DNA from: Macrostomum hystrix
Taxonomy: Eukaryota > Animalia > Platyhelminthes
DNA: 64,000 nt
Reading direction: 5' to 3'
Assembly: GCA_950097015.1 (NCBI GenBank)
Contig: CATNEN010000025.1
Location: 5,704,001 to 5,768,000, forward strand
A model generated the notes under the pieces. It saw nothing but the letters and a program-made list of their open reading frames with translations. It had not been told where the DNA came from and did no database searches. Within the stretch, counting starts at the first letter, position 1, and each line of letters starts with the position of its first letter. Below, one piece after another: positions 8,019-48,400 of the stretch. The position numbers and the translations under genes are program-made.

Positions 8019-10427
8019 TCAGCCGCTCATGCTGACGCTGTGAATGAAATGGCATCGGCTGCCGTAGGCGCAGAACCCAACAGAGTTGTACTGGATGCAT
8101 TTGATAGTCTTGTACTTGTTAGGCCGTTCCCGGCTGCGCAACTGATGGGACCCGTGTGCGAATGTGCAGCGATCGCCAAACGGACAGGTTGACAGGATCT
8201 GCAAACGGTTTGAAGATGAGGATCTAGCATGCTAAAAATCAAATCATTAAACCTGTTCCTATTTTAACCAGATGTGCACAGCCACAGCTATTGAAGGTTG
8301 TGTACGGCTGTTCAGTCCATGGACTGGGGAGACCCACAACCACCCTCAGTTACCTGCAGAGCTGATGCTACCTAGATAGGTGAACTGAAGGGGGTCGGTA
8401 GCAGAGCGGTTAACGCGTCTGCCTCTCGCACCACGGTTTCCGTGGCGAAGCCTAATTTATGTAGGTAGGGCTCAGCCGCGTAGAGAAGGCTTGGGGGCTT
8501 GTCGTGCAATTTACGCTCTTTAGGGACAACCTCCAAGGCACAGTGAGAGTGTAACTGCCTGACGATGAGAAAGTCAGGGCAGATGTACACACCTGTGTGA
8601 GCGTGTGCCTGCGTACGTGTGTGCTCTGTGTGTGTATCTGTGTGCGTGTGTGCTCAGGAGTCCGCGAAATGGGCAGAATTGCCTCCTCGCTGGCTGCGGA
8701 TCTATAGTGTCACCATATGATGTGCAATTGCCCGCAGATCTCGTGCAAATGTTTTATTATTATTATTGTTAGGTGCAATCTTGCGATAGGGGCCTCGCGG
8801 CCTATTCGCGGCGTCTCGCCCCCCCGCCAGTAGTTAGGTGCAATCGAGAGTTAATTATTTTGCTAAAGAACACACATATTCCCATTTTTTGTTTAAAAAC
8901 GCTAAAATATGATTAATAAATAAAATGCTGAAGTCGGAGCCTACCTCGAAGTGCCTGCAAAGCTCAGTCTTGTGCTTGCCCGGCTCCAGATTCGGAGAGA
9001 TGGCCACTCGACACTTCTGTCCCCCCATCGGCTGCTGGCACAGTGTCGGCGAGGGCAACAGCAGCAGCAGCGGCTGCGGCGACAGCGTCAGGGGCGGCGA
9101 TGATTGCGACTTTAAAGGCGAAAGCAAATTATTGACATGTAGCGTTGGAGTATGTAGAGTTCTCGCTGTTTGCTTTGTGTTAAAATGGCTAATGTCAACT
9201 ATGGCTAATTCCTGCCCGCAAACAAACCTCATCTGTCTCATCTCTCCCCTATCTCCTCTCTCCCCTGTCTCATTTCTCTCCTGTCTCATCTCTCCCCTGT
9301 CTCATTTCTCTCCTGTCTCATCTCTCCCCTGTCTCATCTCTCCCCTGTCTCATCTCTCCCGTGTCTCAACTCTCCCCTGTCTCATCTCTCCCGTGTCTCA
9401 TCTCTCCCCTGTCTCATCTCTCCCCTGTCTCATCTCTCCCTTGTCTCATCTCTCCCGTGTCTCATCTCTCCCCTGTCTCATCTCTCCCCTGTCTCATCTC
9501 TCCCTTGTCTCATCTCTCCCGTGTCTCATCTCTCCCCTGTCTCATCTCTCCCCTGTCTCATCTCTCCCGTGTCTCATCTCTCCCCTGTCTCATTTCTCCC
9601 GTGTCTCATCTCTCCCCTGTCTCACCTCTCCCTTGTCTCATCTCTCCCCTGTCTCATCTCTCCCGTGTCTCATCTCTCCCCTGTCTCATCTCTCCCCTGT
9701 CTCATCTCTCCCTTGTCTCATCTCTCCCTTGTCTCATCTCTCCCGTGTCTCATCTCTCCCCTGTCTCATCTCTCCCCTGTCTCATCTCTCCCGTGTCTCA
9801 TCTCTCCCCTGTCTCATCTCTCCCCTGTCTCATCTCTCCCTTGTCTCATCTCTCCCCTGTCTCATCTCTCCCGTGTCTCATCTCTCCCCTGTCTCATCTC
9901 TCCCCTGTCTCATCTCTCCCCTGTCTCATCTCTCCCTTGTCTCATCTCTCCCTTGTCTCATCTCTCCCGTGTCTCATCTCTCCCCTGTCTCATCTCTCCC
10001 CTGTCTCATCTCTCCCTTGTCTCATCTCTCCCCTGTCTCATCTCTCCCCTGTCTCATCTCTCCCTTGTCTCATCTCTCCCCTGTCTCATCTCTCCCGTGT
10101 CTCATCTCTCCCCTGTCTCATCTCTCCCTTGTCTCATCTCTCCCCTGTCTTATCTCTCCCCTGTCTCATCTCTCCCCTGTCTCATCTCTCCCGTCTCATC
10201 TCACTCCTGTCATCTCATCTCACTCCCCTGTCTCTCCCCCCTGTTTATCCTGCCCGCTCCCGTCTTTCCGATGTCATCCCTGGCTTGCAAGAAAAAATGT
10301 TCTGATCCAGCTGAGTAGAACAATATGAATAACAATAAGGTACGAGTAGTATGGCTCAATTGTCGCGTAATCTTACCTGTCCGTAAACGCTGGACACATC
10401 GGACATGATGGAACTTGCGCTGGACAT
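8019..10427 (-). CDS. TIS11/ZFP36-like tandem CCCH zinc-finger RNA-binding protein, about 165 aa; exons 10427-10377, 9211-8945, 8198-8019
   Basis: Splicing in phase 0 gives KHKTELCRHFE|ILSTCPFGDRCTFAHG (C-x8-C-x5-C-x3-H) and a second finger KYKTIKC...C...C...H. All junctions are GT-AG. The start exon is less certain; an upstream in-frame ATG exists at 10661. Confidence 0.85.
8270..8390 (-). mobile_element. SINE family A, 3' portion
   Basis: Shares CAGTCCATGGACTGGGG and TGAACTGAAG with the copy at 60170-60455. Confidence 0.7.
8391..8770 (+). mobile_element. tRNA-derived SINE family B with an (ATT)n-like tail
   Basis: Reverse complement of the element at 29920-30285 (GTTAACGCGTCTGCCTC, AAGGCTTGGGGGCTTGTCGTGCAATT, GATGAGAAAGTCAG). 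Confidence 0.75.
9225..10230. repeat. 16-bp satellite (TCTCATCTCTCCCCTG), same family as 1-7080 but inverted; in TIS11-like intron 1
   Basis: Direct tandem monomers. Confidence 0.95.
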
Positions 10428-31552: not shown

Positions 31553-31894
31553 ATGAGCGCAGCTAAGAAAGTTTCAAAGAAGGCGCAGGAGAACATCAAC
31601 GCCAGGCTGGCTCTAGTAATGAAGAGCGGTAAAGTTGTTCTGGGACTCAACCAGACTGTCAAGAGCCTCCGACAGGGCAAGGCCAAGCTAGTGATCCTGG
31701 CTAACAATACCCCGGCCCTCAGAAAGAGTCTTATCGAGTATTACTCGATGCTGGCTAAAGCTGGCGTGCATCACTACAGCGGTAACAACATCGAGTTGGG
31801 AACAGCGTGCGGCAAACACTTCAAAATCTGCACAATGGCCATAATTGAAGCCGGAGATTCCGACATCATCCGTGAGACCATCGCCGGAAACTAA
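31553..31894 (+). CDS. RPL30: 60S ribosomal protein L30 (eL30), 113 aa, intronless CDS
   Basis: [13 protein letters not shown]...[11 protein letters not shown]...GDSDII. An acceptor (CTTGCAG) lies at 31527 and AATAAA at 31979-31984. Confidence 0.98.
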
Positions 31895-32149
31895 TTTCCT
31901 GTGTTATAAACAGGAAAAATTATTTGTTATGGATGGACTGACAGTCGTTCAGATGCAACAGTAAAGCTTTGCGCTTAAAATAAACTGAGTGTTCTTTGGA
32001 GTGGCTCGCTTGCTATTCGCGGAGCCTTCCAAACAATTTGTGGATTATTTCTTTTTGTTGTGTTTTTCATTTATTCCAAGACTCTGGTTACTCCAGAAGT
32101 TTAAGATAAGAGTCGGTACTTATATTTTGATTCAAGGGTGTGCACTCAG

Positions 32150-33015
32150 AGTCGGGATCAATTGTCGGGACTAAGTATCAGGATCCAGTGTCTGGACTAA
32201 GTATCGAGATCAAGCGTTGGGACTAGGTATCGGGATCAAGTGTCGGGACTAAGTATCGGGATCAAGTGTCGGGGACTAGGTATCGGGATCAAGTGTCGGG
32301 ACTAAGTATCAGGATCCAGTGTCTGGACTAAGTATCGAGATCAAGCGTTGGGACTAGGTATCGGGATCAAGTGTCGGGACTAGGTATCGAGATCAAGCGT
32401 TGGGACTAAGTATCAGGATCCAGTGTCTGGACTAAGTATCGAGATCAAGCGTTGGGACTAGGTATCGGGATCAAGTGTCGGGACTAAGTATCGGGATCAA
32501 GTGTCGGGGACTAGGTATCGGGATCAAGTGTCGGGACTAAGTATCAGGATCCAGTGTCTGGACTAAGTATCGAGATCAAGCGTTGGGACTAGGTATCGGG
32601 ATCAAGTGTCGGGACTAGGTATCGAGATCAAGCGTTGGGACTAAGTATCAGGATCCAGTGTCTGGACTAAGTATCGAGATCAAGCGTTGGGACTAGGTAT
32701 CGGGATCAAGTGTCGGGACTAAGTATCGGGATCAAGTGTCGGGGACTAGGTATCGGGATCAAGTGTCGGGACTAAGTATCAGGATCCAGTGTCTGGACTA
32801 AGTATCGAGATCAAGCGTTGGGACTAGGTATCGGGATCAAGTGTCGGGACTAGGTATCGGGATCAAGTGTCGGGACTAAGTATCGGGATCAAGTGTCTGG
32901 ACTAAGTATCGAGATCAAGCTTTGGGACTAGGTATCAGGACCCAGTGTCTGGACTAAGTATCGGGATCAAGTGTCGGGACTAAGTGTCGGGACTAAGTAT
33001 CGGGATCAAGTGTCA
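32150..33015. repeat. About 26-bp satellite (GGACTAAGTATCGGGATCAAGTGTCG) with an approximately 235-bp higher-order period
   Basis: The variant ATCAGGATCCAGTGTCTGG recurs at alternating spacings of about 130 and 104 bp. Confidence 0.93.
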
Positions 33016-33048
33016 GTACTGGCATTTTGCTGTGCGATTTGCTTCCAG

Positions 33049-36011
33049 ATGTCCCTGTACGACGATCTTGACGTCACACCCAGTGGCGGTAGCGGCAGCA
33101 CTGGCGGCGTCGGTGGCGGCGGAAGTGCCGCTTCTGGCTGGAGTCTGCCAATGCAGAAGACCCTGCTACTGCAACAGCAGAAACGATTGCAGCAGCAGCA
33201 GGCGGCTGCGGCTGCGGCGGCGTCTGGCACCGGCAGTGGAGGAGCTGGCCATCAGCGCACAGGCAGCGGCGGCACCACGTCGTCCTCTGGCCCGACTCTG
33301 GCGCCAGTGTTAAATTTGCGTGGCGGAAAACAGCAGCGCGACTCGCGACACGGCGTTATTGTTGGCAATCTGGGCAGCGGAATAGGCGGCGGCGAATACC
33401 GGTTTGTTGCTTATCGGAATTGCTAAATAATACATGCAGCTAGAGGCTAGAGATCTTGAGTATCTAAGGGCCCGGTGAATGTCTAAATCCCGCCTGGCCT
33501 CTCAACATCTACTCCATCTTATAGATCTCCCCCGCGTCATCTCTCCACAGTCTCTGCGGATCCTATTTCATCTCCCCCACGTCATCTCTCCCCTGTCCTA
33601 TCTAATGGGGATCTTATCTCATCTCCCCCCACTTTATCTCTCCCCTATCTAAGGGGATCCTATCTTATCTCTCCCCTGTCTAAGGGGATCCTATCTCATC
33701 TTCCCCAGACATCGTGCTTACCACAAATACAGACCATTGTTCTGTAAAAAAAGCGTCTATTCATCCGTATTCAACAAGCTGTTAGTTGTATTTGGCCTGC
33801 TGTTCATAGGTTCAACCAGCGCACCGGGCGCATGGAGCGAACCGAGCTAACCGCCGCTGTCGGCCCTAAAGCCGGCGTCAACGATCCAACCCTGGCTCTG
33901 GGACCAGACGACGATTATAACCCGTTTTATCCTAACGAGTACGACGAAGTTGTCGGCATGGTTCGAGCGAAACGAAAAATGCAAGAATTAGCCGATACAG
34001 ACAGACAGGCAAAAGAGAAGCAACAGAAGCGGCAGCAGCAGCAGCAGCAACAGCAACAGCAATCGTCTAGCCATGATTCTGATGGCAGCTTCGACCGGTC
34101 GGGCTCAGACAGCGAAGAAGAAGAGGAAGAGAAAAAACGACGCATGGGTCGCGGCGCTTACATCGCTCCGCCCAGCTCACTACTTGAGCAGGACTCAAAG
34201 CCAACTAGCGAACCGCCAGCTGGCGCCGCCGGCTCTTCTCAGTTTCCGCCGTTTGGCGGCAAGCAGAGCCTAGCCGAGAAGCACAATGTTAGCAATGCTG
34301 CTGCCAAAATGATGGCCAAAATGGGCTATAGACACGGACAGGGCCTCGGTCGCGAAGGCCAGGGCATGGCATCGGCCCTCTTAGTAGAGAAGACAAGCAA
34401 ACGCGGAGGAAAGATAGTCAGCGAATTGGATCGCTATAAGAATCCGTCCCTTGTAAGTAAAAAGCTGGGGCAAGAGGGAGTTCATATCTGGCTTTTTAAG
34501 GATTTATTAAAGCGAGTGTAATCTTCCGCAAACTCCAGCCCGCGGGCCAGGTGCGGCCCTCAAAGCTCCCAAGTCTCTTCCCGTTGCCACTTCTAACACC
34601 TATGGTATCCTGTCTCATATTCCCGTCTTATCTGAAGATAAAGAGTCTCATCTCTCGTTTTTCATCTCTCCCCTGTCTCATCTCTCCCCTGTCTCATCTC
34701 TCCCCTGTCTCATCTCTTCCTTGTCTCATCTCTCGTTTTTCATCTCTCCTTGTCTCATCTCTCCCCTGTCTCATCTCTCCAGTGTCTCATCTCTCCAGTG
34801 TCTCATCTCTCCAGTGTCTCATCTCTCCAGTGTCTCATCTCTCCAGTGTCTCATCTATAGTTTTTTATCTCTCCCTGTCTCATCTCTTCCCAGTCTCATC
34901 CCTCCCCTGTCTCGTCTATCCCGTGTCTCAACTCTCCTGTGTCTTATCTATCCCCTGTCTCATCTCTCCCCTTCCTCATATTGCTACAGAAAAAGCGGCC
35001 CGCTGTCGTATTTTAGGTTCTCTGCGTGACACGCACGCTAATAAGTTTGCCGACCCCTGTTCTACATAATATCCCTAAGCTCATATCCCTTAAACTTATC
35101 GCCTAAATTCACTCATGCACCATTTTCCCCTAATTAACTTTCCATCCCTAGACCCCAGTTCCCCAAAATATAATGCTCTATGTCCCAATTAACTTCAAAT
35201 CCCTTAAAATTCACATTAACTTAAATTCGCATTTCGCAACCCACAAACTTCTCATCCCCTAATCTTCCCATTTACTTTATTTTAAATCCTCGAATTTCGT
35301 TTCCACAAAACATGTAAAAATTCCGTTAACCGTTCAGCGAATATACGTAGGGTGTCCCAGAAATAGCGGGAAAAATCGATGCACAGGCAAACTGGTGAAA
35401 CATAGTTTATTGAAACTTATGTCACTGATAAATAAACATTCAGCAGTTCTAACGCTTTTTAAATTAAGTAAATATGTCAATTCATTAAAAAGTTATGGCT
35501 AAAATTAGAACTGCTGCCGGTTCAGATACATTTGTGATGTGATGAAAACAATTTACAGGCTATTTGACACAGCTTTGCGTGATATGCATTCCACCAACTC
35601 TGATTAAAAAAGCGACACATATCTTAATGGAATTGTTGGAGAATTCCCCCCCAATATAAATTGTGTTACTTTTAATGTGTCCCCCTTCCCCAGGTGATCA
35701 TGCTCACCAACATGGTGGGCCCCGGCGAGGTTGACGACGAACTAGAAGACGAAATCAAAGACGAATGCCAAAAGTACGGCCCAGTGGTCCTAGTTACTAT
35801 ATATGAACTGCCGCAGCCAAATCTACCAGCAGAGGAGGCTGTTAGAATCTTTGTCGAATTCGAGCGCATGGACTCGGCTATTAAGGCTATGAACGAACTG
35901 AATGGCCGATTCTTTGGCGGCCGCACTGTCACTTGCCGATTCTACGATACAGAGAAGTTTCGCGACTTAGAACTCGATGGCCTGCCTTTGCCTTTGGAAT
36001 TGAATGAGTAA
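33049..36011 (+). CDS. RBM17: Splicing factor 45 (G-patch plus UHM), about 437 aa; exons 33049-33401, 33810-34452, 35694-36011
   Basis: MSLYDDL N-terminus, DDYNPFYPNEYDEVV, RGAYIAPP, G-patch KMMAKMGYRHGQGLGREGQG and UHM NMVGPGEVDDELE...LNGRFFGGRTV. Junctions are in phase. Confidence 0.95.
33520..33700. repeat. Degenerate ATCTCTCCCC satellite remnant in SPF45 intron 1
   Basis: Resembles the 16-bp family. Confidence 0.55.
34610..34980. repeat. 16-bp TCTCATCTCTCCCCTG-family satellite in SPF45 intron 2
   Basis: Direct reading of the monomers. Confidence 0.85.
35345..35520. mobile_element. Possible Tc1/mariner-type MITE remnant
   Basis: TAGGGTGTCCCAGAAA resembles TACAGGGTGTCCC-type termini. The second end was not found. 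Confidence 0.3.
35534..35608 (+). ncRNA. Box C/D snoRNA family A, copy 1 (SPF45 intron 2)
   Basis: C box GTGATGA at 35539-45 and D box CTGA at 35600-03, preceded by TCCACCAACT, which is complementary to conserved 18S AGTTGGTGGA. It ends 90 nt before the 3' splice site. Confidence 0.8.
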
Positions 36012-36089
36012 TGCTTATGCTTAGAGAATAATTTGACTTGTTCACAATTGCTAGCTAAGACAAATCGAGATTCCAATTCCCAGAGACAT

Positions 36090-36420
36090 CGAGATCCCCC
36101 ATCCCCAGTCACGCCGTGATCCCCATTTCCAGTCATGCCGTGATCCCATCCCCAGTCATGCCGTGATCCCATCCCCAGTCATGCCGTGATCCCCATTTCC
36201 AGTCATGCCGTGATCCCATCCCCAGTCATGCCGTGATCCCATCCCCAGTCATGCCGTGATCCCATCCCCAGTCATGCCGTGATCCCATCCCCAGTCACGC
36301 CGGGATCCCCATTCCCAGTCACACCGATATTCCTATTATCAGTCATACAAAGGTCCCCATTCCCAGTCACAATGTGATCCCTATTGCCAGTCATACCGAG
36401 ATCCCTGCTCCCAAACACAG
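36090..36420. repeat. 23-24-bp satellite (CCCCAGTCATGCCGTGATCCCAT) just after the SPF45 stop
   Basis: Direct reading of the monomers. Confidence 0.9.
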
Positions 36421-37054
36421 CGAGATCTAATTTATGGTGCATTTTATCCCATGCAGCCTAACTGTTTGCTATAATTAGAAATGTCCTAGCTTATGAGATT
36501 TCTATTCAAATCTTTATGTTCTTTGCTGGCTTCTGTAACTCATAGTTTATTCTTCTCATTAGGCTCCTTATTATCCGAAAATGTGTTTTTAACATAACAC
36601 TGATGTCTGCCTTTCAGATTTACATGTTTCTGTGTACATTTCTGTATAACTGTGTTCTCGTTATTGTATGTTTTTCGTGTATAATAATTGATATGCTTCT
36701 CTGTTAATTATGTTTGAATGTGCAGTTTAGTGATTGACGTTGAGACGACGGAGTCTATAAATCATAAGTTTTTTTTGCCTCAGGTGTCTTTAGCAATGGG
36801 CAATATGGAAAATGTGATTGTGTTGACAACCCTTAAAGTCTAGCAGTTGACAACCTTAGCAATTTCAGTTTATCTCGTAAGTATAAAAATATGGTTTTGA
36901 TTTTCCGTTCAATTTATAATATTGTTAAAGACAGTTAAAGTTAAAGGCCGTTCTAACAGTCTTGTAGTGTTAAGAAGTCGCTCCGTAAAATAAAGTAAAA
37001 ATTAAATAACGCTTTGTTGTTTAAACTTTATTTCTTAAAAATCTATTGAAAAGA

Positions 37055-37164
37055 GCCGTAATGATGATAATTATCAAATGGCTATTTGACATGGCGGGCA
37101 TTGTTGGCCTATAGCCGCATAGTCACGCCTAATTGATACTTAACTCCACCAACTCTGATGCGGC
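37055..37164 (+). ncRNA. Box C/D snoRNA family A, copy 2 (between SPF45 and ZC3H13)
   Basis: Terminal stem GCCGTA/TGCGGC, C box ATGATGA at 37061-67, guide ACTCCACCAACT at 37143-54 and D box at 37155-58. Confidence 0.85.
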
Positions 37165-37219
37165 TGTTCTAGATTTTAGATTTCTAGGTTAATTATTAAG
37201 GCTTTCGATAATAGGGACA

Positions 37220-38203
37220 GGTGTAGGATTGTGATGGTGGGTGCCAGTTGTAGGATTGTGATGGTGGGTGCCAGTTGTAGGATTGTGATGGTGGGTGCCA
37301 GTTGTAGGATTGTGATGGTGGGTGCCAGTTGTAGGATTGTGATGGTGGGTGCCAGTTGTAGGATTGTGATGGTGGGTGCCAGTTGTAGGATTGTGATGGT
37401 GGGTGCCAGTTGTAGGATTGTGATGGTGGGTGCCAGTTGTAGGATTGTGATGGTGGGTGCCAGTTGTAGGATTGTGATGGTGGGTGCCAGTTGTAGGATT
37501 GTGATGGAGGGTGCCAGTTGTAGGATTTGTAGGTGGGTGCCAGTTGTAGGATTGTGATGGAGGGTGCCAGTTGTAGGATTGTGATGGTGGGTGCCAGTTG
37601 TAGGATTTGTAGGTGGGTGCCAGTTGTAGGATTGTGTAGGTGGGTGCCAGTTGTAGGATTGTGATGGTGGGTGCCAGTTGTAGGATTGTGATGGTGGGTG
37701 CCAGTTGTAGGATTGTGATGGTAGGTGCCAGTTGTAGGATTTGTAGGTGGGTGCCAGTTGTAGGATTGTGTAGGTGGGTGCCAGTTGTAGGATTGTGATG
37801 GTGGGTGCCAGTTGTAGGATTTGTAGGTGGGTGCCAGTTGTAGGATTGTGTAGGTGGGTGCCAGTTGTAGGATTGTGATGGTGGGTGCCAGTTGTAGGAT
37901 TGTGATGGTGGGTGCCAGTTGTAGGATTGTGATGGTGGGTGCCAGTTGTAGGATTGTGATGGTGGGTGCCAGTTGTAGGATTTGTAGGTGGGTGCCAGTT
38001 GTAGGATTGTGTAGGTGGGTGCCAGTTGTAGGATTGTGATGGTGGGTGCCAGTTGTAGGATTGTGATGGTGGGTGCCAGTTGTAGGATTGTGATGGTGGG
38101 TGCCAGTTGTAGGATTGTGATGGTGGGTGCCAGTTGTAGGATTTGTAGGTGGGTGCCAGTTGTAGGATTGTGTAGGTGGGTGCCAGTTGTAGGATTGTGT
38201 AGG
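37220..38203. repeat. 27-bp satellite (GTGATGGTGGGTGCCAGTTGTAGGATT)
   Basis: Direct reading of the monomers. Confidence 0.96.
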
Positions 38204-38265
38204 TAAATGTAATTTGTGTGATTACGCAGGTGTTAAATCGTTGCTAACCCCCCAACCCTTTCCAG

Positions 38266-40011
38266 TCTGATAAGCATCGCAAGCGGGACAGGTCCAGTCC
38301 GGCTAAGCGGGACAGGGATCATGAGCCGGAAAAGAACAGAAAAAACAAAGAACAGAGCAGCAAAGACAAAGACACATCTGGGCCCGATCAGCCAAGCAAA
38401 TCTGCCGGCGCCAGGCCTAGCGTGTTCGATCGGCTCGGCCTGCGCACTGACGACAAGCCGCGCGGCGGTCAGCCGCCTGCATTGAAGAAGCCGAAGAAGG
38501 ATGGGGACGGAGAGTCTACTACGACTCATGCGGGCGCCCCGATTGAGGCCGGCGACAAGCCGAAGGACAAAGAAAACGATCGAGAAGACCGGAAGTGCCG
38601 TTCCTCGTCGCCTGGAACAGCAACAGCTGCGCCGGCGACCTCGGCAGAATCTACTAATAATCAACAGCAACGGCCTAGAAAGTTTACAGCTCTGAACCTC
38701 AGTCAGCGCGTGCAGCCTTCTTCAAATAGGCAGCCAGCCGGAGCAGCCGATGCTGATTCCACCAAAGCTGCTGGCAGACGCCTGGAACGCGGCGGCGGAA
38801 GTCGATCGCGCCGGGGAAGAAATCGTCGCATTAGAAACGACTTGGCGCCATCTCTGCGACTGTCGGCTAAGCGTCACGCCAGACGCGACGCTGACGATGG
38901 CGACTATGACAATGTCGACGACAACAAGCAGCGCAGCCGGAGCAGGTCATTGTCAACAGGCAGTAGCAGGCACTCTTCCGCTGGTTCTAGATCCTCAGCG
39001 TCAGCATCCGGCTCCTCGGACAAATCTCGCTCGCCTTCTAAATCAAAATCTAAGTCGCCGGTGCCTCCGCTGATGGCGCCTCCAGCACAGAAACAGCAGC
39101 AGCAGCAGCAGCAGCAGCAATCTGATCAGACAATCGATCAGGTAGAGCTGGCCAGAGAGCTATACAGGCGGAAGCTGGCTAACCTGCCGCAGCCGTCAGC
39201 CATCAAGGAGCGTCGTGAGCGTCGACGCAAAGCCGAAGCTGAGGCTGCAGCTGCGGCGTCCTACGCCGGACCGCCCGGCACCAATATTGTTGTAGGCCTT
39301 GACGACGATCTGCCGTCGCCGACGCGCGGGCACCGCTACAAGTACGCCAATATGCCGTTCGCTCCGCCCGGCCGCAGGCGACTGCGCGACGATGAAAGTC
39401 CGGCCGCTGTCGGTGCTGCCGCCGTCGCTGCTGCGAAAGCCGCCGCCGCTGCCGAAGCGGCCCGCCTAGCCGAGCCGTGCATCCTGACTGAGGTGCTGTA
39501 CGACCTGGAAGATCTGGAGGATGTGTCAGATTCTGAGCTCACCCTGCCAGAGGAGGAGGATCGCCTAGCAGCGCTACTCGGTCCGCCCCCGGCGCCGCAC
39601 CGCGGCATCGTTGAAAGCCTAGGCGTCGATTGGAATGTCCTCAGATCGGCTGGCGCAGCTGCCGCCGGCCATCAGCATCAGCAGCAGCAGGATCACCATC
39701 ACCATCAGCATCAGTACTACTATCAGCGACCCGCAGATCTGCTTCCTGGCCCCGTCCTCTGCCGTCTCGGCGTTTCTAAGCGACTTGCAGGCGAGCAGCT
39801 CTACCGACTGGTGTCCGGCCGACTGGCTCCGCCCGGCCTTCTTAACGATCGGCCCTACGCGCACCGAAGCCAGCTGGCCCGCCTGCGCGCCCGGGAAGCT
39901 CCGCTGCTCGGCTGCGCCGGGCCTCACGGAGGCGGCGCCCTCAGCGCTCGAGTCGATTTGGCTGTTAGACGGTTTCTGCTGGCTTCGCTAAGCAGCGCCG
40001 TACAGGGCTAG
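38266..40011 (+). CDS. ZC3H13: ZC3H13/Flacc-like m6A writer complex subunit; single 581-codon exon with no N-terminal ATG
   Basis: N-terminal RPSVFDRLG (human RPSVFERLG). C-terminal LGVDW, LLPGPVLCRLGVSKRLAGEQLY and ALSARVDLAVRRFL resemble the conserved ZC3H13 C-terminal domain as I recall it. The frame is open from the acceptor at 38265. Confidence 0.8.
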   Translation, partial: SDKHRKRDRSSPAKRDRDHEPEKNRKNKEQSSKDKDTSGPDQPSKSAGARPSVFDRLGLRTDDKPRGGQPPALKKPKKDGDGESTTTHAGAPIEAGDKPKDKENDREDRKCRSSSPGTATAAPATSAESTNNQQQRPRKFTALNLSQRVQPSSNRQPAGAADADSTKAAGRRLERGGGSRSRRGRNRRIRNDLAPSLRLSAKRHARRDADDGDYDNVDDNKQRSRSRSLSTGSSRHSSAGSRSSASASGSSDKSRSPSKSKSKSPVPPLMAPPAQKQQQQQQQQQSDQTIDQVELARELYRRKLANLPQPSAIKERRERRRKAEAEAAAAASYAGPPGTNIVVGLDDDLPSPTRGHRYKYANMPFAPPGRRRLRDDESPAAVGAAAVAAAKAAAAAEAARLAEPCILTEVLYDLEDLEDVSDSELTLPEEEDRLAALLGPPPAPHRGIVESLGVDWNVLRSAGAAAAGHQHQQQQDHHHHQHQYYYQRPADLLPGPVLCRLGVSKRLAGEQLYRLVSGRLAPPGLLNDRPYAHRSQLARLRAREAPLLGCAGPHGGGALSARVDLAVRRFLLASLSSAVQG

Positions 40012-41103
40012 CCGATTTTTATTATTTGGAAGAACTAAAACTACCCTTGTTTGTGTAATGTTAATTGTCTGGAAATTATGGTCGCCGCATACTACTAAGA
40101 GTATGAATATCAAATATACTCCAATTTTGTTCGATTGCATTTGCATTTCTCCTATATAATTGCTAAGTGCTAAGTTAGCGCTGTTTGTTTGTTACTTGCC
40201 TGTTTTTTGTTCTCAATTACTGCAGTCTGCTTGCAGGTATCAATTATGTTAAAACATGCTTTCTTAAGCTTATATATATGTAATTAGAGATTGGTATCAC
40301 GGCACTATTTTTATATATTAGTCACGAGCAAGATATAATTTTATAGGCTAAAGATTCCACGTAGACTAAGAGATTGAGTTTCATATTGTTTGGCTAACCA
40401 ATCAGCATATAACAATAAGTAATAGACTCAATACAATACAATTAGTAATCAGTAATTTGATTAATCGGCATAGGTTATCAAGCAAGCTTAACAAAAATGT
40501 TGTAATGTATGTAAATATTTTGCTTATTTAAATTAATACATAAAAAGTGCTAATTACTTTGTATGACGTTAATTACTCGTTCTCGGTCACTTAATTGTCT
40601 TCTTGATTTGTTTTTAATTTGATTAGATATATATATATTTACATTCTGATAGCCATAAAAAACACGTGCTGTACATATCCGCTATTTTAATTTTTGTTCG
40701 TGCAATCGTTATTCGTTATGCAACTATAAAAACATGTTTGTAAACGGTTAGTAAATAGGCATTATCTTCAGTTTAGAACAATAGAGAATTCGTGGCAATA
40801 GTTACTACAAATTTAGTAAGATAATAACATATTTCCATAAGAAAGTAAATAATGTTTAGTAAATCATTGATCATTTGCCCAATTTATATTATACTTATTT
40901 TTATAGATATGAGGTATTTTTTACTTATAAGCTCAACATGAAATCAGAATGTTTCAAGCTCTGTCCAATAATAATTCCAGCAAAGAGAAGCATTGACAAA
41001 AACTGTAAGCTCTGAACGAACTAAAAATAATTGGAAAGAATTGTCAGAAAAACACTTCTAAGGTGAGTCAACAAATCTATATTCGTTTTTTTACATTTTT
41101 TGC

Positions 41104-41170
41104 TTTTTATGATGCTATATTCAATAGATACTACTGATGTTAGTTTGATGCGATTCGGATTCTGATGTCG
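41104..41170 (+). ncRNA. Box C/D snoRNA family B, copy 1
   Basis: C-like box ATGATGC at 41109, guide CAATAGATACTA followed by D' CTGA at 41134, C' TTGATGC, and D CTGA at 41162. It lies 82 nt before the acceptor at 41247, inside a GT-AG interval (41063-41247). Confidence 0.7.
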
Positions 41171-41835
41171 TAAAGTAAATAGTAAACAGTAAATAGTAAA
41201 AAATCTATTGACTGGTTTACTAGAACTGTACGCATTTCTCTTTTCAGATAGTCAACAATTTCAAGACGTACAATTCGAAAGATAGTTTTATTTGTAAGTA
41301 CTCTAAATAAAAATTATCTTCTCCGAATTTTACTGCAGAATTTTTTTAATGGTATGATGCTTATTATAATAAACCCGATGAAAAAAGGGTCGCCGTTGTG
41401 GGTCAAAAGTGTCTCAACTCCGCTAAGTGCAGCACCCCAGTTAGCTATTTTAAGAGGGGTAAGAGTTATGACGCTTTATCAACTTTAAACCCAAAATGTC
41501 AAACGCAGACCGCGATTTTGACTCAAAAACGTCTTAAAAACGGATCACATGAGCCGCCAGTTGGGGGGTGGTGTACGTGGCGCATGGTTGTGCGTACATT
41601 ACTGGGGTGGTAGGGAAACCCCAGCTGCGCATGTGGGCTATAGACGGCTAAAAAACTGGTCAATTATGACTGTGGCGTCCCAAATGTTGTTTCAAAGTTG
41701 TCAATACGGCTAAAGTGTTGGTTAAATGAATGATGGTTAAGCGGCTCAAATGGTGGATTCCTTTAAAAAGCAAAAAAATAAGCAATAAGCAAAAATAAAG
41801 AAATGTGCATTTTAACACCCGTCACTCATTACTCA

Positions 41836-42300
41836 TGACGCTTAGTTTTACCTATGTAGGAGATGTTATGTTTGTACACAAGGGTTAAGGAGCATTGGAT
41901 TAGAAATTCTGCCATCAATGAGCACCTTCTCTCGTGTAACTCCTGTTGCAATAAGAACTGTTGTGATATGTTTAAAGTGATTGATTCCTGTAGCCAAGAA
42001 AACAAATTGAACATTCTCGAGGCTATCTACATTAAGGCTCAGAAACCATTTTTGAACAGCCAGTTAGCCATGGGGGGTGCAAGCCGCCAATTCAATGTGT
42101 TTTAGCTATGTTAGAAGCGTCTTTGAACTTTATTTGGTTTTTGTTTTTTTTCTGTTGTTAACCGGACTGGACCGAAATTGATTCGCACTTTGCATTGTAC
42201 AGTTTTCATTTCTTAAATATATATATAACTTGGTTCTGTGTGTTTAATTGATGTGTCTGCCCTGAAGATGACCGATTGTGGTCGAAATGCATTGGAAAAA
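41836..42300 (+). mobile_element. 5'-truncated Penelope-like retroelement: GIY-YIG endonuclease C-terminus, inverted 5' piece and hammerhead motif
   Basis: LYTRVKEH...ILEAIYIKAQKPFLNSQ on + and HNISYIGKTKRH on - at 41836-41870. The CTGAAGA...GAAA hammerhead core is at 42262-42287. Confidence 0.85.
42255..42297 (+). ncRNA. Minimal type I hammerhead ribozyme motif
   Basis: CTGAAGA-T-GACC(gattgt)GGTC-GAAA, a palindromic stem III ATGCAT, and only a short CC/GG stem I. Confidence 0.6.
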
Positions 42301-42436
42301 TTCTAAGAAAATTTAAATGTTGATTCTGAGTTTTCTCGATTCAATTGTTGTCAAGCGAGCTACTCTACCTGAATTATTGGTATCAATTTACCTTAATATG
42401 GCAGGTTATCAGTTTGAGCTGCACTACAAACTTATC

Positions 42437-45400
42437 ATGGTTAGTCCAGGCGACACTACTCAAACTGCTACTGGGCAGGACAATTCACCTGCCAGCCTAA
42501 AATCGGCCGGCAATCAGGAATTCCAATTAGGGAATTATCAATCGGCGCTGGATATTTATAGTCGGGCCCTAGGTCAGCCTGGTAGCCTTCCAATCGACCT
42601 GTCTCTGGCGTTGCGTAGCAACCGAGCACAGTGCGCGTTAAAACTCGGCCAACCCGAGTCCGCTTTAGCCGACTGCTCAGTCGTGCTCGAGCACCGGCCT
42701 AACGATCCTAAAGCTCTGTTCCGCCGGGCTCAGGCCTACGAAATGTTGAACAAACTGGCCGACGCCTACAAGGATGCTAGTCAGCTGTTTAAACTGGATC
42801 CCGGCAATAAGGCTGTGCAACCAATGCTGGCGCGACTACAGGTAGGAATTTGTTTTGGAGCTCGGCGAAGGTCTCATTAGCTTGGGCCGCTTGCCGCGCA
42901 ATTTTAGTGTTTTTTTTAAGGCTAACCTGCAGAGTACAGTGTGAGAGTTTACGATTTCCGACCATAAGAAAGTCAGGGCAGATGTACTATAATATAATAA
43001 TAATATAAAGCGCACGCCATCAATAATAATAATAATAAATCAAGGTAACACTCCCAGTGCGACTAGTCAAAGTTTCTTCTCGTTGGATACGGGTCTTGTG
43101 TTACCAATAATATATACTCGTATAGTCATAAAATATACACCCCAATCGGGCCAAATGTGCAGCCGACAGCACAGCCGCAGCTATTGCGCGGCGCATCTGT
43201 AGGCTTCGTAGGGCTGTCCAGTCCATGAACTGGGGGGACTCCGCACCCACCCTGAATTACCCCAGCTGATGCTGGTACCCATTTCACAATCGAAGCTAAA
43301 AGACACATTTTCCAGTGGCGTTGGGAATCAATTTCACCAAATCATGTGTCAGTGCCCACAGCCCATCTGCAATTATTATATTTTACACACTAAGCGATAA
43401 ATAAAACCACCTACTTATAGTAGCAATAGACAATATATAAGGAAATGTTTTTTATCCCTGATATATTGCAATGATGAAAAAATATTTTATCAGGCTATTT
43501 TGATTTTTAAACAAAAATCTGATATTCATACTCCACCAACTCTGAATATTCTTTTATAAAAAAGAAACGTTAAACGATATGCAACTACGAATCAAACCAT
43601 TCTTTTTTTTACATCGGATCCTCATTCATTATTAAAACATATTCGCTAGGTGGCCCTGGAAAAGCGTCGGGAAGAGGTCGGCACAACCGAGGCCAAGACT
43701 CGCTCCATGCTGGACATGATTGTTGGCGATGAAGTCGAAACTGACGAAGAGAAGCGCGTACAGTGTCTGAATAACATGACCGCTCTGTGCCGCCAGCCTC
43801 CCTGCCGAGCCGCTCTGTGGGACTCGGCCGGCCTAGTGCCCCGGCTCCTTCAATTGGCCACTAAATCTGTGAACTCTTCTCCTAATACCTTTGAAGCAGC
43901 AGCTCGCCTATTGTCTAGCCTTACCAAGGACTCGCCTGACCGAAGTCGCATTCTATTGGACACGCTATCTGTTCAGGGCGTGCATCGCCTGCTAGTACTT
44001 TCTGAGTCTGAGCCTATTTCTAGGTCTCTATTGATGCTGCTCAAATCACTGGTGTGGGAGATGGCCGGCATTGAGGAGTACAGGTACGAGAGGCCATGTC
44101 TACGTGTCTGTTATTTGGGAATGGCATGTTCTTTTGGCTTTTGTAATGGCATGTCTTTTAGGCTTTTGTAATGGCATGTCTTTTTGGCTTTTGTAATGGC
44201 ATGTCTTTTAGGCTTTTGTAATGGTATGTCTTTTAGGCTTTTGTAATGGCATGTCTTTTTGGCTTTTGTAATGGCATGTCTTTTAGGCTTTTGTAATGGT
44301 ATGTCTTTTGGCTTTTGTAATGGCATGTCTTTTTGGCTTTTATAATGGTATGTCTTTTTGGCTTTTGTAATGGTATGTCTTTTTGGCTTTTGTAATGGCA
44401 TGTCTTTTAGGCTTTTGTAATGGTATGTCTTTTGGCTTTTGTAATGGCATGTCTTTTTGGCTTTTATAATGGTATGTCTTTTTGGCTTTTGTAATGGTAT
44501 GTCTTTTTGGCTTTTGTAATGGCATGTCTTTTTGGCTTTTATAATGGTATGTCTTTTTGGCTTTTGTAATGGTATGTCTTTTTGGCTTTTGTAATGGTAT
44601 GTCTTTTTGGCTTTTATAATGGCATGTCTTTTTGGCTTTTGTAATGGCATGTCTTTTAGGCTTTTGTAATGGTATGTCTTTTGGCTTTTGTAATGGCATG
44701 TCTTTTTGGCTTTTATAATGGTATGTCTTTTTGGCTTTTGTAATGGTATGTCTTTTTGGCTTTTGTAATGGCATGTCTTTTTGGCTTTTATAATGGTATG
44801 TCTTTTTGGCTTTTGTAATGGTATGTCTTTTTGGCTTTTGTAATGGTATGTCTTTTTGGCTTTTATAATGGCATGTCTTTTTGGCTTTTGTAATGGCATG
44901 TCTTTTTGGCTTTTGTAATGGCATGTGCGTTGGCTTTTATAATGGCATGTGCTTTGGCTTTTATAATGGCATGTGCGTTGGCTTTTATAATGACATGTGC
45001 GTTGGCTTTTATAAATAGCATGTGCGTTGGCTTTTATAATGGCATGTGCTTTGGCTTTTATAATGGCATGTGCTTTGGCTTTTATAATGGCATGTGCGTT
45101 GGCTTTTATAATGGCATGTGCGTTGGCTTTTATAATGGCATGTCTTTTTGGCTTTTATAATGGCATGTGTGCTTTGTGAAGTGTTAATAGTATCATGCTT
45201 TTATGATAGGAGAGCATGCATTTTCACAGACGTGTTTTAATTGAAAGAAACTTACTATACTATGATGCGCTTAAACAATAGATACTACTGATCTCTACTG
45301 ACGAGACTCGGATCTGATCATACTATGTGCGTTTTGATCTTCTAGCTTAATTTTGTAACTTTGTTCTACTCAATAAAAATCTGCTCAACTTTCCTTTCGC

Positions 45401-48400
45401 AGGCAACGCCGCGGCAAAGCCGAGGAAGAGCGCCGTAAAGCCTTGTCAATGGGAATGATTGCTAAGCCGCTGCCCCAGCTGCAGCTGTCTGAAGATATTG
45501 CTATCAGGATTGACGCCCTGCTGCGCGAACTGCTGCAGGCTTCGCATAGCAACCGACTGCAAGCCTACACTAGGGATGCTGTGCTAGAGCTACTGGTCAT
45601 GCTCATCAACAAGAAGGAATCTCTCACCTGGTATAAACAGTTCATAGATTGCGGCGGTATTGAGACTATACTCAATGTCACCTGCGCATTTCACAAAGGC
45701 TCGCACGAGCATCTGAAAGTGACTGAGGACACTAGGCGACACGCGTCTCTGTTGCTGGCTAGAGTGTACGAGGACCTGACCTCCGATCAGCTGCGCCAGG
45801 CCTTTCGCGACGCCGCCTCCACCTTTGTCATGGACCTGCTGACTGATAAGTTCTTCGACTCCAAGATTGAAGCTTTGAATGCGCTCAGCGCACTGTTGGA
45901 GGGGCCGCACGAGATTGCTCAGTCTATCATTGGCAGCGAAGGCATTCTGGAGGGTGAGTGAACTTTTTTAACTTTTTGCTAAAGGACACAATTTTTTCAA
46001 GTGGATTTGGGAATCGAACCCCCGACCTTCAAGTTATGATGAGTCCGACGATCTAACCACAATAGGTTACAACCCCATTCATTGTAGTGACCCTTGCATT
46101 ACCTGTTTATCTACATCTAGGCGAAAATGGTTTTCAAGCTGTCACCAAAATGACTGCCGCCAGTGCCCACAGCCCTCCTGCAATCATTTTTTATCTTAAT
46201 CCTTATAGGAGTTCTACTCCTAGCCCAGAGCGGCATCGAGCTGCACCAGCGACTGGCCTTAGAAACATTAGTACTGGCCATCAGTAAGAAGGCCAAAGCT
46301 GATTCTGTACTGCGCTCAGCTCTACCCGTACTTCAGAAGATGTACACTAGTGGCAAGGATGCTATTAAAGTTCGAGCCCTGGTTGGCCTGTGCAAACTGG
46401 GCACCGCCAGCGGCTCGGACAGCTCCGGCCGTGGCCTGGCCGACGGCTCCAATCTGGTGCTGGCCAAATCGTGCCGACGCTTTTTAGCTAATCCGGACAA
46501 AGACCTAGATCTGCGCCGATGGGCGGTTGAGGGACTGGCCTTTCTATGTCTGGATGCCGAGGTGCGCTTTATAAAAAATCATTTCCCAGTCCTTCATTCA
46601 GTTGGTCATAGCCCAGTCCTTCATTCAGTTGGTCATAGCCCAGTCCTTTATTCAGTTGGTCATAGCCCAGTCCTTCATTCAGTTGGTCATAGCCCAGTCC
46701 TTTATTCAGTTGGTCATAGCCCAGTCCTTTATTCAGTTGGTCATAGCCCAGTCCTTCATTCAGTTGGTCATAGCCCAGTCCTTCATTCAGTTGGGTCATT
46801 GCCCAACCCGTCCTTCATTCAGCTTGGTCATAGCCCAGTCCTTCATTCAGTTGGTCATAGCCCAGTCCTTCATTCAGTTGGTCATAGCCCAGTCCTTCAT
46901 TCAGTTGGGTCATTGCCCAACCCGTCCTTCATTCAGCTTGGTCATAGCCCAGTCCTTCATTCAGTTGGTCATAGCCCAGTCCTTCATTCAGTTGGGTCAT
47001 TGCCCAACCCGTCCTTCATTCAGCTTGGTCATAGCCCAGTCCTTCATTCAGTTGGTCATAGCCCAGTCCTTCATTCAGTTGGGTCATTGCCCAACCCGTC
47101 CTTCATTCAGCTTGGTCATAGCCCAGTCCTTCATTCAGTTGGTCATAGCCCAGTCCTTCATTCAGTTGGTCATAGCCCAGTCCTTTATTCAGTTGGTCAT
47201 AGCCCAGTCCTTCATTCAGTTGGTCATAGCCCAGTCCTTTATTCAGTTGGTCATAGCCCAGTCCTTTATTCAGTTGGTCATAGCCCAGTCCTTCATTCAG
47301 TTGGTCATAGCCCAGTCCTTCATTCAGTTGGGTCATTGCCCAACCCGTCCTTCATTCAGCTTGGTCATAGCCCAGTCCTTCATTCAGTTGGTCATAGCCC
47401 AGTCCTTCATTCAGTTGGTCATAGCCCAGTCCTTCATTCAGTTGGGTCATTGCCCAACCCGTCCTTCATTCAGCTTGGTCATAGCCCAGTCCTTCATTCA
47501 GTTGGTCATAGCCCAGTCCTTCATTCAGTTGGGTCATTGCCCAACCCGTCCTTCATTCAGCTTGGTCATAGCCCAGTCCTTCATTCAGTTGGTCATAGCC
47601 CAGTCCTTCATTCAGTTGGGTCATTGCCCAACCCGTCCTTCATTCAGCTTGGTCATAGCCCAGTCCTTCATTCAGTTGGTCATAGCCCAGTCCTTCATTC
47701 AGTTGGGTCATTGCCCAACCCGTCCTTCATTCAGCTTGGTCATTGCCCAACCCCAGTCTTCCTGTTAGTTGGTCATTGCCCAACCCCAGTCTTTCTGTTA
47801 GTTGGTCATTGCCCAAACCCAGTCTTACTGTTAGTTGGTCATTGCCCAAACCCAGTCTTTCTGTTAGTTGGTCATTGCCCAAACCCAGTCTTTCTGTTAG
47901 TTGGTCATTGCCCAACCCCAGTCCTACGGTCAGTTGGTCATTGCCCAACCACAGTCCTTCGGTCAGTTGGTCATTGCCCAACCACAGTCCTTCGGTCAGT
48001 TGGTCATTGCCCAACCACAGTCCTTCGGTCAGTTGGGTCATTGCCCAACCACAGTCCTTCGGTCAGTTGGTCATTGCCCAACCACAGTCCTTCGGTCAGT
48101 TGGTCATTGCCCAACCCCAGTCCTACGGTCAGTTGGTCATTGCCCAACCCCAGTCCTACGGTCAGTTGGTCATTGCCCAACCACAGTCCTTCGGTCAGTT
48201 GGTCATTGCCCAACCACAGTCCTTCGGTCAGTCGGTCATTGGCCAACTTCAGTCGTTTAACCCAATCGCTTACCAATTTTACATTTTTTATAAAGTTGTA
48301 CCTATCAACAAGACGAAACTGGGTTTTAACAGGTGAAAGAAGACCTATGCGAGCATACGGACGCACTGCAAGCCCTCTCAGACTTGGCCCTGCGCTCGCG

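What the first reader, a model, noticed from the sequence alone, without database searches (positions are those of the whole stretch)
38244..38270. ZC3H13 has no start codon of its own; the spliced leader may supply the AUG
Seen: a textbook acceptor (branch point CTAAC at 38244-48, pyrimidine tract, CAG at 38263-65) opens in phase 0 onto SDKHRKRD...RPSVFDRLG, a motif near the N-terminus of human ZC3H13. An in-frame TAA lies at 38245-47 and the first in-frame Met is more than 250 codons downstream. The nearest clean upstream exon (36784-36876) has no usable ATG, and the satellite-end donor at 38203 is preceded by an in-frame TAG. Known: flatworm spliced leaders end in AUG, and this AUG can initiate translation in Schistosoma. 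Inference: SL trans-splicing creates M-SDKH..., which would make an m6A-writer subunit obligately dependent on trans-splicing.
Basis: partly seen in the sequence, partly recalled or inferred. Interest (0 to 1): 0.82.

Follow-up and report, generated by a model that had tools for sequence, protein, structure and literature searches.

The report
Spliced leader supplies this gene's AUG
In this Macrostomum flatworm, RNA data show that a likely ZC3H13/Flacc (m6A-writer) gene has no start codon in the genome and gets its only usable AUG from the trans-spliced leader, a mechanism known in flatworms since 2006.

Summary
CTAAC lies at 38244-48 and the acceptor CAG at 38263-65. A 581-codon ORF runs from 38266 to the TAG at 40009-11. 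There is an in-frame TAA at 38245, and the first genomic in-frame ATG is codon 270.

In three runs of one study, one contig per run starts with 23 letters identical to the 3' part of the published Macrostomum spliced leader, then follows the window from 38265. Nothing covers 38200-38264. The mRNA therefore reads ...GCAUG|UCUGAUAAG, giving M-S-D-K in frame. The next seven AUGs are all out of frame.

The N-terminal 269 codons are coding: the frame stayed open in only 1 of 20000 shuffles, and dN/dS against M. lignano is about 0.17. The M. lignano orthologue has the same acceptor, phase and upstream stop, and GenBank calls it 'partial'.

Initiation at the leader AUG is inferred, not shown. ZC3H13 identity is probable but weak: the best PDB hit is the human ZC3H13 Barding domain at E 0.02, and no zinc finger is present.

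Leader-donated AUGs are established in flatworms and already noted for Macrostomum. First readers of this scan flagged at least 14 similar, unchecked cases in this genome. This is a well-documented new member of a known kind.

The parts
38244..38248 (+). Branch-point-like CTAAC, 18 nt upstream of the acceptor AG
   Evidence: Sequence. Its use as a branch point is inferred.
38249..38262 (+). Pyrimidine-rich tract (CCCCCAACCCTTTC)
   Evidence: Sequence.
38263..38265 (+). Trans-splice acceptor CAG. The leader is joined between 38265 and 38266.
   Evidence: in X4, X5 and X6 the contig fits from 38265 and carries 23 leader letters before it. The G at 38265 coincides with the G of the leader's ATG. 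The M. lignano orthologue has the same ttccag|TCTGA.
38266..40008 (+). Coding sequence of the ZC3H13/Flacc-like protein: 581 genomic codons, 582 residues with the leader's Met. It is a single coding exon in this species.
   Evidence: ORF. mRNA contigs cover 38265-39081 and 39127-40200; the gap is a skipped CAG repeat. It is 88% identical to M. lignano P0001 over the C-terminal 290 residues. N-terminal dN/dS is about 0.17.
38413..38439 (+). RPSVFDRLG motif (codons 50-58), identical in M. lignano
   Evidence: Its likeness to the human ZC3H13 N-terminus is recalled from memory only.
39073..39075 (+). First genomic in-frame ATG (codon 270). It is not conserved in M. lignano, and seven out-of-frame ATGs precede it.
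39739..39999 (+). Stretch that matches the human ZC3H13 Barding (VIRMA-binding) domain
   Evidence: 7VF2_B is the top PDB hit. It aligns profile positions 98-184 to chain 416-509, which is about human residues 1521-1614.
40009..40011 (+). Stop codon TAG
40012..40372 (+). 3' UTR as far as the contigs reach. The poly(A) site is not mapped.
   Evidence: contigs cover 39127-40200 and 40195-40372.
36012..38265 (+). Outron or intercistronic region after the SPF45-like gene (stop at 36009-11). It holds a C/D snoRNA (about 37053-37166) and a 27-nt satellite (37218-38199).
   Evidence: Apart from the acceptor, only the snoRNA guide and D box are conserved with M. lignano.
40978..41060 (+). Internal control: the acceptor (CAG at 40978-80) and first exon (40981-41060) of the next gene, UNC45, which carries the same leader
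   Evidence: One search gives the same 23 loose letters before 40980, plus GT..AG joints 41060/41246, 41293/42405 and 42839/43648. Here the leader AUG is out of frame and opens a 27-codon uORF.

Best explanation
The window comes from a Macrostomum flatworm. The gene at 38266-40011 is a single-coding-exon orthologue of M. lignano BOX15_Mlig009547g1, most likely the ZC3H13/Flacc subunit of the m6A writer complex in a form without a zinc finger.

Its pre-mRNA has an outron that ends at the acceptor CAG at 38263-65. The spliceosome joins the genus-wide spliced leader there. That leader ends in AUG, so the mature mRNA is leader + UCU GAU AAG... The leader's AUG is the first AUG of the mRNA and is in phase 0 with the ORF.

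Scanning ribosomes start at that AUG and make a 582-residue protein, M-SDKHRKRD.... The 5' UTR is nothing but the leader.

Shown: the junction, the frame, the lack of any genomic start codon, selection on the N-terminal codons, and the same layout in a second species. Inferred: that initiation happens at the leader AUG, and that the gene is the downstream member of a polycistronic unit RPL30 - SPF45 - ZC3H13 - UNC45.
For: Organism and leader:
- the closest proteins and the syntenic locus are from M. lignano.
- the published Macrostomum leaders end ...TGCGAAGACTCAATTTATTGC-ATG.

The junction:
- Three runs each give an 875-nt contig with 23 letters of the leader, then the window from 38265, with 0 to 3 mismatches in 817 nt.
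- Depth in the first bin equals 132/197 of the contig depth, so nothing covers 38200-38264.
- The same leader is joined at 40980/81 on the next gene. GT..AG introns are skipped, so the runs are mRNA.

The frame:
- the leader AUG opens the 582-codon ORF. The next seven AUGs are all in the +1 frame with ORFs of 53-107 codons. The next in-frame AUG is at mRNA position 843.
- frame 0 has no stop in 269 codons (1 of 20000 shuffles), and dN 0.50 against dS 2.9 versus M. lignano.

Conservation:
- M. lignano has the same acceptor and phase, an in-frame TAA 33 nt upstream, and no in-frame Met anywhere in its 234-codon first exon. Similarity starts at codon 1 (SDKHRKRD against SDKNRKRD).
- no conserved upstream exon.

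Precedent:
- the leader AUG is an established initiator in Schistosoma (Cheng et al. 2006, as cited).
Against: - There is no ribosome profiling, N-terminal peptide or reporter data, so the initiation site is inferred.
- The leader AUG has a weak context (U at -3, U at +4). On the neighbouring UNC45 mRNA the same AUG is out of frame, so it cannot be used efficiently on every mRNA, or else reinitiation occurs.
- All the RNA evidence is assembled contigs from one study. Contigs hide rare isoforms and say nothing about 5' ends.
- In M. lignano, a transcriptome ORF (P0003) joins SPF45 in frame to this ORF through a 25-nt mini-exon, so a route without the leader exists at some level.
Confidence: 0.85

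Rival explanations
1. The mRNA is trans-spliced, but translation starts at the internal AUG at 39073. That would give a 312-residue protein holding only the C-terminal part, and 38266-39072 would be 5' UTR.
For: It is the first genomic in-frame ATG. Its context has a purine at -3 (CTGATGG). The leader AUG has a weak context.
Against: Seven out-of-frame AUGs lie before it. The upstream 269 codons are open (1 of 20000 shuffles) and show dN/dS of about 0.17. They contain blocks conserved with M. lignano, including RPSVFDRLG, from codon 1 on. This Met is absent from the M. lignano protein.
Confidence: 0.05
2. The main mRNA is cis-spliced. An upstream exon, from the gene's own promoter or from SPF45 read-through, supplies the AUG, and the leader form is a side product.
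For: M. lignano P0003 is an in-frame fusion of RPL30, SPF45, a mini-exon and this ORF. Parasitic flatworms are reported to share acceptors between cis- and trans-splicing (PMC12582326).
Against: All three runs give a leader-bearing contig running unbranched into the exon, and nothing else overlaps 38200-38396. No upstream exon is conserved between the two species. The exon-like stretch 36784-36876 has an in-frame stop. The M. lignano mini-exon sequence is not kept in the window.
Confidence: 0.05
3. Initiation is at a non-AUG codon inside the exon or the leader, and the leader AUG is bypassed.
For: Near-cognate initiation on spliced leaders is proposed for nematodes and other taxa (PMC9851317).
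Against: An in-frame AUG is the first start codon a scanning ribosome meets. Conservation begins at the first exon codon. Nothing calls for a rarer mechanism.
Confidence: 0.03
4. The gene is not ZC3H13/Flacc but an unrelated, lineage-specific R/S/K-rich nuclear protein. The leader-AUG conclusion would stand, but the link to m6A would fall.
For: There is no Pfam hit and no Atlas hit. phmmer against 1.84 billion proteins finds only Macrostomum proteins. The PDB match is only 16-18 bits. The AF2 model is unusable, with pLDDT 39.9.
Against: It aligns collinearly within the most conserved ZC3H13 segment, the Barding domain at residues 1492-1643 (PMC9652331). ZC3H13 homologues are known to be very divergent: fly and human share 21% identity, and fly and Ciona lack the zinc finger (PMC5900714).
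Confidence: 0.17

Closest known systems
[quoted passage not shown]
   Same: The leader ends in AUG and is trans-spliced in phase onto an ORF that has no AUG of its own. As reported in PMC9851317, the AUG is in frame in 28% of trans-spliced S. mansoni transcripts, and more than 40 cDNAs need it.
   Different: This is a free-living macrostomid with a different gene. Here the junction is shown only by RNA contigs. Translation was tested in Schistosoma but not here.
Macrostomum SL trans-splicing and operons (Ustyantsev & Berezikov 2021, PMC8629364; Wiberg et al. 2023, PMC10468722)
   Same: The leader is the same over the 24 nt seen here. About 20-30% of genes are trans-spliced, and repeat-rich intercistronic spacers are described. 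The G3 paper says the leader's final ATG is likely a translation start codon.
   Different: In the text I read, those papers do not list genes that depend on the leader AUG and do not mention this gene.
ZC3H13 / Flacc / Xio, subunit of the m6A-METTL-associated complex (PMC5900714; PMC9652331; PDB 7VF2 chain B)
   Same: The C-terminal segment aligns to the VIRMA-binding Barding domain (...PG.V..R.G.SK.LAG..L...). The remainder is R/S/K/D-rich and of low complexity. It lacks a zinc finger, as fly Flacc does.
   Different: It is much shorter (582 residues against 1668 in human). The match is only 16-18 bits. No interaction or m6A data exist for it.
slORFs: ORFs created by SL addition in nematodes, Oikopleura and trypanosomes (slORFfinder, PMC9851317)
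   Same: The leader supplies the start codon of the translated ORF.
   Different: Those cases mostly use near-cognate NUG codons and often make alternative ORFs. Here a true AUG opens the conserved main ORF.

Membership tests
Flatworm genes whose initiator AUG is donated by the spliced leader | The organism's spliced leader ends in AUG | tested here: met
   The loose end ...TTATTGCAT plus a shared G appears at two acceptors in three runs. It is identical to the published leaders of M. lignano, M. cliftonense and M. hystrix.
Flatworm genes whose initiator AUG is donated by the spliced leader | The leader is trans-spliced exactly at the 5' edge of the ORF | tested here: met
   The contigs of X4, X5 and X6 switch from leader to window at 38265/38266, with no coverage of 38200-38264.
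Flatworm genes whose initiator AUG is donated by the spliced leader | The leader AUG is in frame with the conserved ORF, with no stop between | tested here: met
   AUG-UCU-GAU-AAG opens a 582-codon ORF.
Flatworm genes whose initiator AUG is donated by the spliced leader | No genomic in-frame AUG upstream of the conserved N-terminal coding sequence | tested here: met
   There is a TAA 21 nt upstream, and the first ATG is codon 270. The M. lignano orthologue is the same. The N-terminal part is coding.
Flatworm genes whose initiator AUG is donated by the spliced leader | Translation shown to begin at the leader AUG | not testable with these tools
   This needs ribosome profiling, N-terminal proteomics or a reporter assay.
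ZC3H13 / Flacc | C-terminal Barding domain, the most conserved segment, which binds VIRMA | tested here: inconclusive
   7VF2_B is the top PDB hit, at E 0.074 for the single sequence and 0.02 for the two-sequence profile, over about 90 collinear residues. The exhaustive phmmer search found no non-Macrostomum relative.
ZC3H13 / Flacc | CCCH zinc finger near the N-terminus | tested here: not met
   There is no Pfam zinc-finger hit, and the protein has only four Cys. The feature is not universal: fly Flacc and Ciona lack it (PMC5900714).
ZC3H13 / Flacc | N-terminal RPSVFERLG-type motif | tested here: inconclusive
   RPSVFDRLG is present and identical in M. lignano. The human counterpart is recalled from memory, and no tool gave me that sequence.
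ZC3H13 / Flacc | Association with WTAP, VIRMA and RBM15, and a requirement for m6A | not testable with these tools
   This needs biochemistry or RNAi.
Macrostomum operon (downstream gene resolved by SL trans-splicing) | Same-strand neighbours, a trans-spliced downstream gene, and a repeat-adjusted spacer under about 1 kb (criterion of PMC8629364) | tested here: inconclusive
   About 600 nt separate the ZC3H13 contig end (about 40372) from the UNC45 leader site at 40981. From the SPF45 stop to 38266 is 2254 nt, of which about 1.3 kb is satellite. M. lignano fusion ORFs P0002 and P0003 point to read-through RNA. Poly(A) sites and the primary transcript were not seen.

The most novel reading that the evidence does not exclude
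RPL30 - SPF45 - ZC3H13 - UNC45 is a conserved Macrostomum operon. Its intercistronic outron also yields a C/D snoRNA, and the ZC3H13 cistron is untranslatable unless it is trans-spliced. Output of the m6A writer subunit would then be set by the trans-splicing step, with cis-spliced read-through giving either no protein or an SPF45 fusion. That would be a regulatory link between SL trans-splicing and mRNA methylation in a stem-cell-rich animal.
Probability: 0.12. Interest if true: 0.55.

Novelty: new member of a known kind. Interest (0 to 1): 0.3.

Why it matters
The main value is practical.

- **Annotation.** The M. lignano orthologue is deposited as 'partial', and gene finders will truncate or miss genes like this one. 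Adding the leader's ATG at mapped trans-splice sites gives the true N-terminus.
- **Gene identification.** The result gives Macrostomum a candidate for its very diverged ZC3H13/Flacc orthologue, which ordinary sequence searches do not link to ZC3H13. That helps anyone studying m6A in flatworm stem cells.
- **Transgene design.** A cDNA cloned from the genomic exon alone would have no start codon.

Conceptually it adds one clean, two-species example to a mechanism described in 2006.

Tried and rejected
**Searches that gave nothing useful**
- Pfam on the 581-residue protein gave nothing significant.
- The ESM Atlas feature search of residues 395-581 gave no usable hit.
- phmmer of the C-terminal 292 residues against 1.84 billion proteins returned only the two Macrostomum entries.
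- phmmer of the whole protein against the PDB gave only His/Gln-rich noise. The ZC3H13 hit appeared only after trimming to the C-terminal segment.
- The AlphaFold2 model of the C-terminal 187 residues, built from a 2-sequence alignment, had pLDDT 39.9. It was too poor for any fold search, so none was run.
- The leader sequence itself is not encoded in the window (0 matches at up to 3 mismatches).
- Rfam found nothing in 36000-38300.

**Ideas rejected**
It has an in-frame stop and is not conserved in M. lignano.
- The species could not be named from the leader, because M. lignano, M. cliftonense and M. hystrix share it.
- The window is not M. lignano. The N-terminal half is only 107/225 identical, with dS of about 2.9.

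**Limits on the read laying**
Cis joints to upstream exons could therefore only have shown up as loose ends.
- The laid stretch was 5901 letters.

Full report
**1. Observation**

Reading 36600-39600 and translating from 38248 confirms each sequence statement.
- CTAAC sits at 38244-48, followed by a pyrimidine-rich tract and CAG at 38263-65.
- The codon series from 38266 reads SDKHRKRD..., with RPSVFDRLG at codons 50-58.
- A script shows the frame is open for 581 codons to TAG at 40009-11.
- The nearest upstream in-frame stop is TAA at 38245-47.
- The first in-frame Met is codon 270 (ATG at 39073).
- The GTA at 38203, at the end of the 27-nt satellite (37218-38199), is preceded by an in-frame TAG.
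- In the exon-like stretch 36784-36876, the in-frame ATGs run into TAG at 36841.

**2. Organism and gene**

The word search found three relatives, all from Macrostomum.
- P0001 is M. lignano BOX15_Mlig009547g1, annotated 'partial'. It is 88% identical over the C-terminal 290 residues.
- P0002 and P0003 are two transcriptome ORFs (sequences read).

The M. lignano locus (L001) has the same gene order on one strand as the window (tblastn): RPL30, a G-patch/RRM SPF45-like gene, this gene, then UNC45.

The window is not M. lignano itself. The N-terminal half is only 107/225 identical, and dS is saturated at about 2.9.

**3. The decisive test**

The look-up of sequencing runs returned four runs of one study (organism C) that hold 86-94% of the sampled words. 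I laid three of them (X4, X5, X6) plus X1 on window:38200-44100. That stretch is 5901 letters and leaves out the upstream satellite.

Results for X4, X5 and X6:
- Each run gives one 875-nt contig that fits 38265-39081 with 0 to 3 mismatches.
- Each contig carries 23 loose letters before 38265, TGCGAAGACTCAATTTATTGCAT.
- Mean depth in bin 38200-38396 is exactly 132/197 of the contig depth. So nothing covers 38200-38264, and no second contig overlaps the exon start.

The 35-nt M. lignano leader ends ...TGCGAAGACTCAATTTATTGCATG (PMC8629364). [quoted passage not shown] The G at 38265 is shared by the leader's ATG and the acceptor AG. Either way, the mRNA reads ...GCAUG UCU GAU AAG.

Two further results show the runs are mRNA and give an internal positive control:
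- The same 23 letters precede 40980, the acceptor of UNC45.
- UNC45's GT..AG introns are skipped (41060/41246, 41293/42405, 42839/43648).

Further contigs run 39127-40200 and 40195-40372, through the stop codon. The coding region is therefore a single exon in this species. The only gap, 39082-39126, is a CAG repeat that the tool skipped.

**4. Does the leader AUG start translation?**

This step is inferred. The arguments are:
- On the mature mRNA, the leader AUG is the first AUG and opens the 582-codon ORF. The next seven AUGs are all in the +1 frame, with ORFs of 53-107 codons. The next in-frame AUG is at mRNA position 843. Leaky scanning to codon 270 is therefore very unlikely.
- Codons 1-269 are coding. 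There is no stop in frame 0, against 2 and 20 in the other frames. Only 1 of 20000 shuffles stayed open. dN is 0.50 against dS 2.9.
- Similarity to M. lignano starts at the first exon codon (SDKHRKRD against SDKNRKRD) and includes RPSVFDRLG, DKPKDKENDR and RKFTALN.SQRVQP.
- M. lignano has the same ttccag|TCTGA acceptor in the same phase and an in-frame TAA 33 nt upstream. Its 234-codon first exon has no in-frame Met at all. The window's Met270 is not conserved there.
- Between the two species, the spacer keeps only two blocks: the acceptor with the exon start, and the guide/D-box part of a C/D snoRNA. There is no conserved upstream exon.

Precedent from the literature:
- All flatworm leaders end in AUG (PMC12582326).
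- In S. mansoni the AUG is in frame in 28% of trans-spliced transcripts, and more than 40 cDNAs need it (Cheng et al. 2006, as summarised in PMC9851317).
- The Macrostomum genome paper itself marks the final ATG as a likely start codon. Its supplement says the leader AUG is sometimes the initiation site.

**5. Caveats**

- The leader AUG has U at -3 and U at +4.
- On the UNC45 mRNA the same AUG is out of frame and opens a 27-codon uORF ahead of the true Met in exon 3. Recognition cannot be absolute, or reinitiation occurs.
- The evidence is contigs from one study. Contigs drop rare forms.
- In M. lignano, P0003 is an in-frame chain of an RPL30 part, an SPF45 part, an 8-codon mini-exon and then SDKNRKRD.... 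I traced that mini-exon to L001 at about 9166-9190, where it overlaps the 3' end of the snoRNA.
- P0002 likewise fuses this gene to UNC45.
- These fusions look like products of read-through polycistronic RNA. They show that 'obligate' is stronger than the data allow.

**6. Is it ZC3H13?**

Most searches did not link the protein to any family:
- Pfam gave nothing.
- The Atlas gave nothing.
- An exhaustive phmmer search of 1.84 billion proteins found only Macrostomum proteins.
- The AF2 model had pLDDT 39.9 and was not used.

Against the PDB, however, the C-terminal 147 residues hit 7VF2 chain B, human ZC3H13 (1106-1668), as the top match of 177,635 sequences, at E 0.074. A two-sequence profile improved this to E 0.02. 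It aligns about 90 collinear residues to chain 416-509, which is about human 1521-1614.

That range lies inside the Barding domain (1492-1643), the most conserved part of ZC3H13, which binds VIRMA (PMC9652331).

ZC3H13 homologues are notoriously divergent: fly and human share 21% identity. Fly Flacc and Ciona lack the zinc finger (PMC5900714), as this protein does. I put the identity at about 0.8.

**7. Comparison and verdict**

This works like, and meets every testable criterion of, the known class of flatworm genes that use the leader's 3'-terminal AUG as initiator.

First readers of this scan flagged at least 14 further genes of the same genome with the same pattern, among them CHMP6, NDUFA5, SFMBT, PPP2R3C, DPH7, NSA2, HYI and a NUDT12-like gene. 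Those notes are unchecked. They fit the expectation that the pattern is common.

The finding is therefore real and its interpretation is right, but the mechanism is established. I score it as a new member of a known kind, with modest interest, mainly for annotation, for transgene design, and as a pointer to the flatworm ZC3H13 orthologue.

Noticed in passing
window 31619-46543 (+); L001 1-22586: RPL30, the SPF45-like gene, the ZC3H13-like gene and UNC45 lie head to tail in the same order in the window and in M. lignano. M. lignano transcriptome ORFs P0002 and P0003 fuse neighbouring genes. The gap from the ZC3H13 contig end to the UNC45 leader site is about 600 nt. This looks like a conserved operon.
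   Followed up: partly
window 40981-42839: UNC45 is trans-spliced to the same leader, but here the leader AUG is out of frame. It opens a 27-codon uORF that ends in exon 1, and the real Met (MVSPGD...) is in exon 3. The same AUG thus acts as initiator on one mRNA and as a uORF start on its neighbour.
   Followed up: partly
window about 37053-37166; L001 about 9048-9176: A C/D-box snoRNA-like element lies in the outron upstream of the acceptor. It has a C box ATGATGA, a guide TCCACCAACT next to a D box CTGA, and a short terminal stem. Its guide/D-box block is the only spacer sequence conserved with M. lignano. It has no Rfam match. It belongs to another finding of this window (s1-405185).
   Followed up: partly
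window 37218-38199; L001 9252-9900: Both species carry a G/T-rich satellite between the snoRNA and the trans-splice acceptor, with a 27-nt unit in the window and a 29-nt unit in M. lignano. The units share only a GTGGGTGNCAG core. Whether they are homologous or functional is unknown.
   Followed up: no
L001 about 9166-9190: In M. lignano, a 25-nt mini-exon uses the snoRNA's D-box CTGAG as its acceptor. It restores the frame between the last SPF45 codons (donor GA|GTGATT at the stop codon) and the ZC3H13-like ORF, as seen in P0003. The window has a similar GA|GTAATG donor at the SPF45 stop (36007/08) but no matching mini-exon.
   Followed up: partly
window 36098-36396: A 23/70-nt satellite sits just after the SPF45 stop. 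A 15-nt block that follows the stop directly in M. lignano lies 600 nt further on in the window (36606-36620). The satellite was probably inserted into the 3' UTR.
   Followed up: no
window 43125-43321: Contig depth is very high here (about 800-1750, against about 20 elsewhere) inside a UNC45 intron, with many loose ends. This points to a highly expressed or repeated element, which I did not identify.
   Followed up: no
L001 10697 onward: The M. lignano orthologue has an intron after ...KSPVASQQ. The window species has a continuous exon there, with a CAG/polyQ tract. This is an intron gain or loss between congeners.
   Followed up: no
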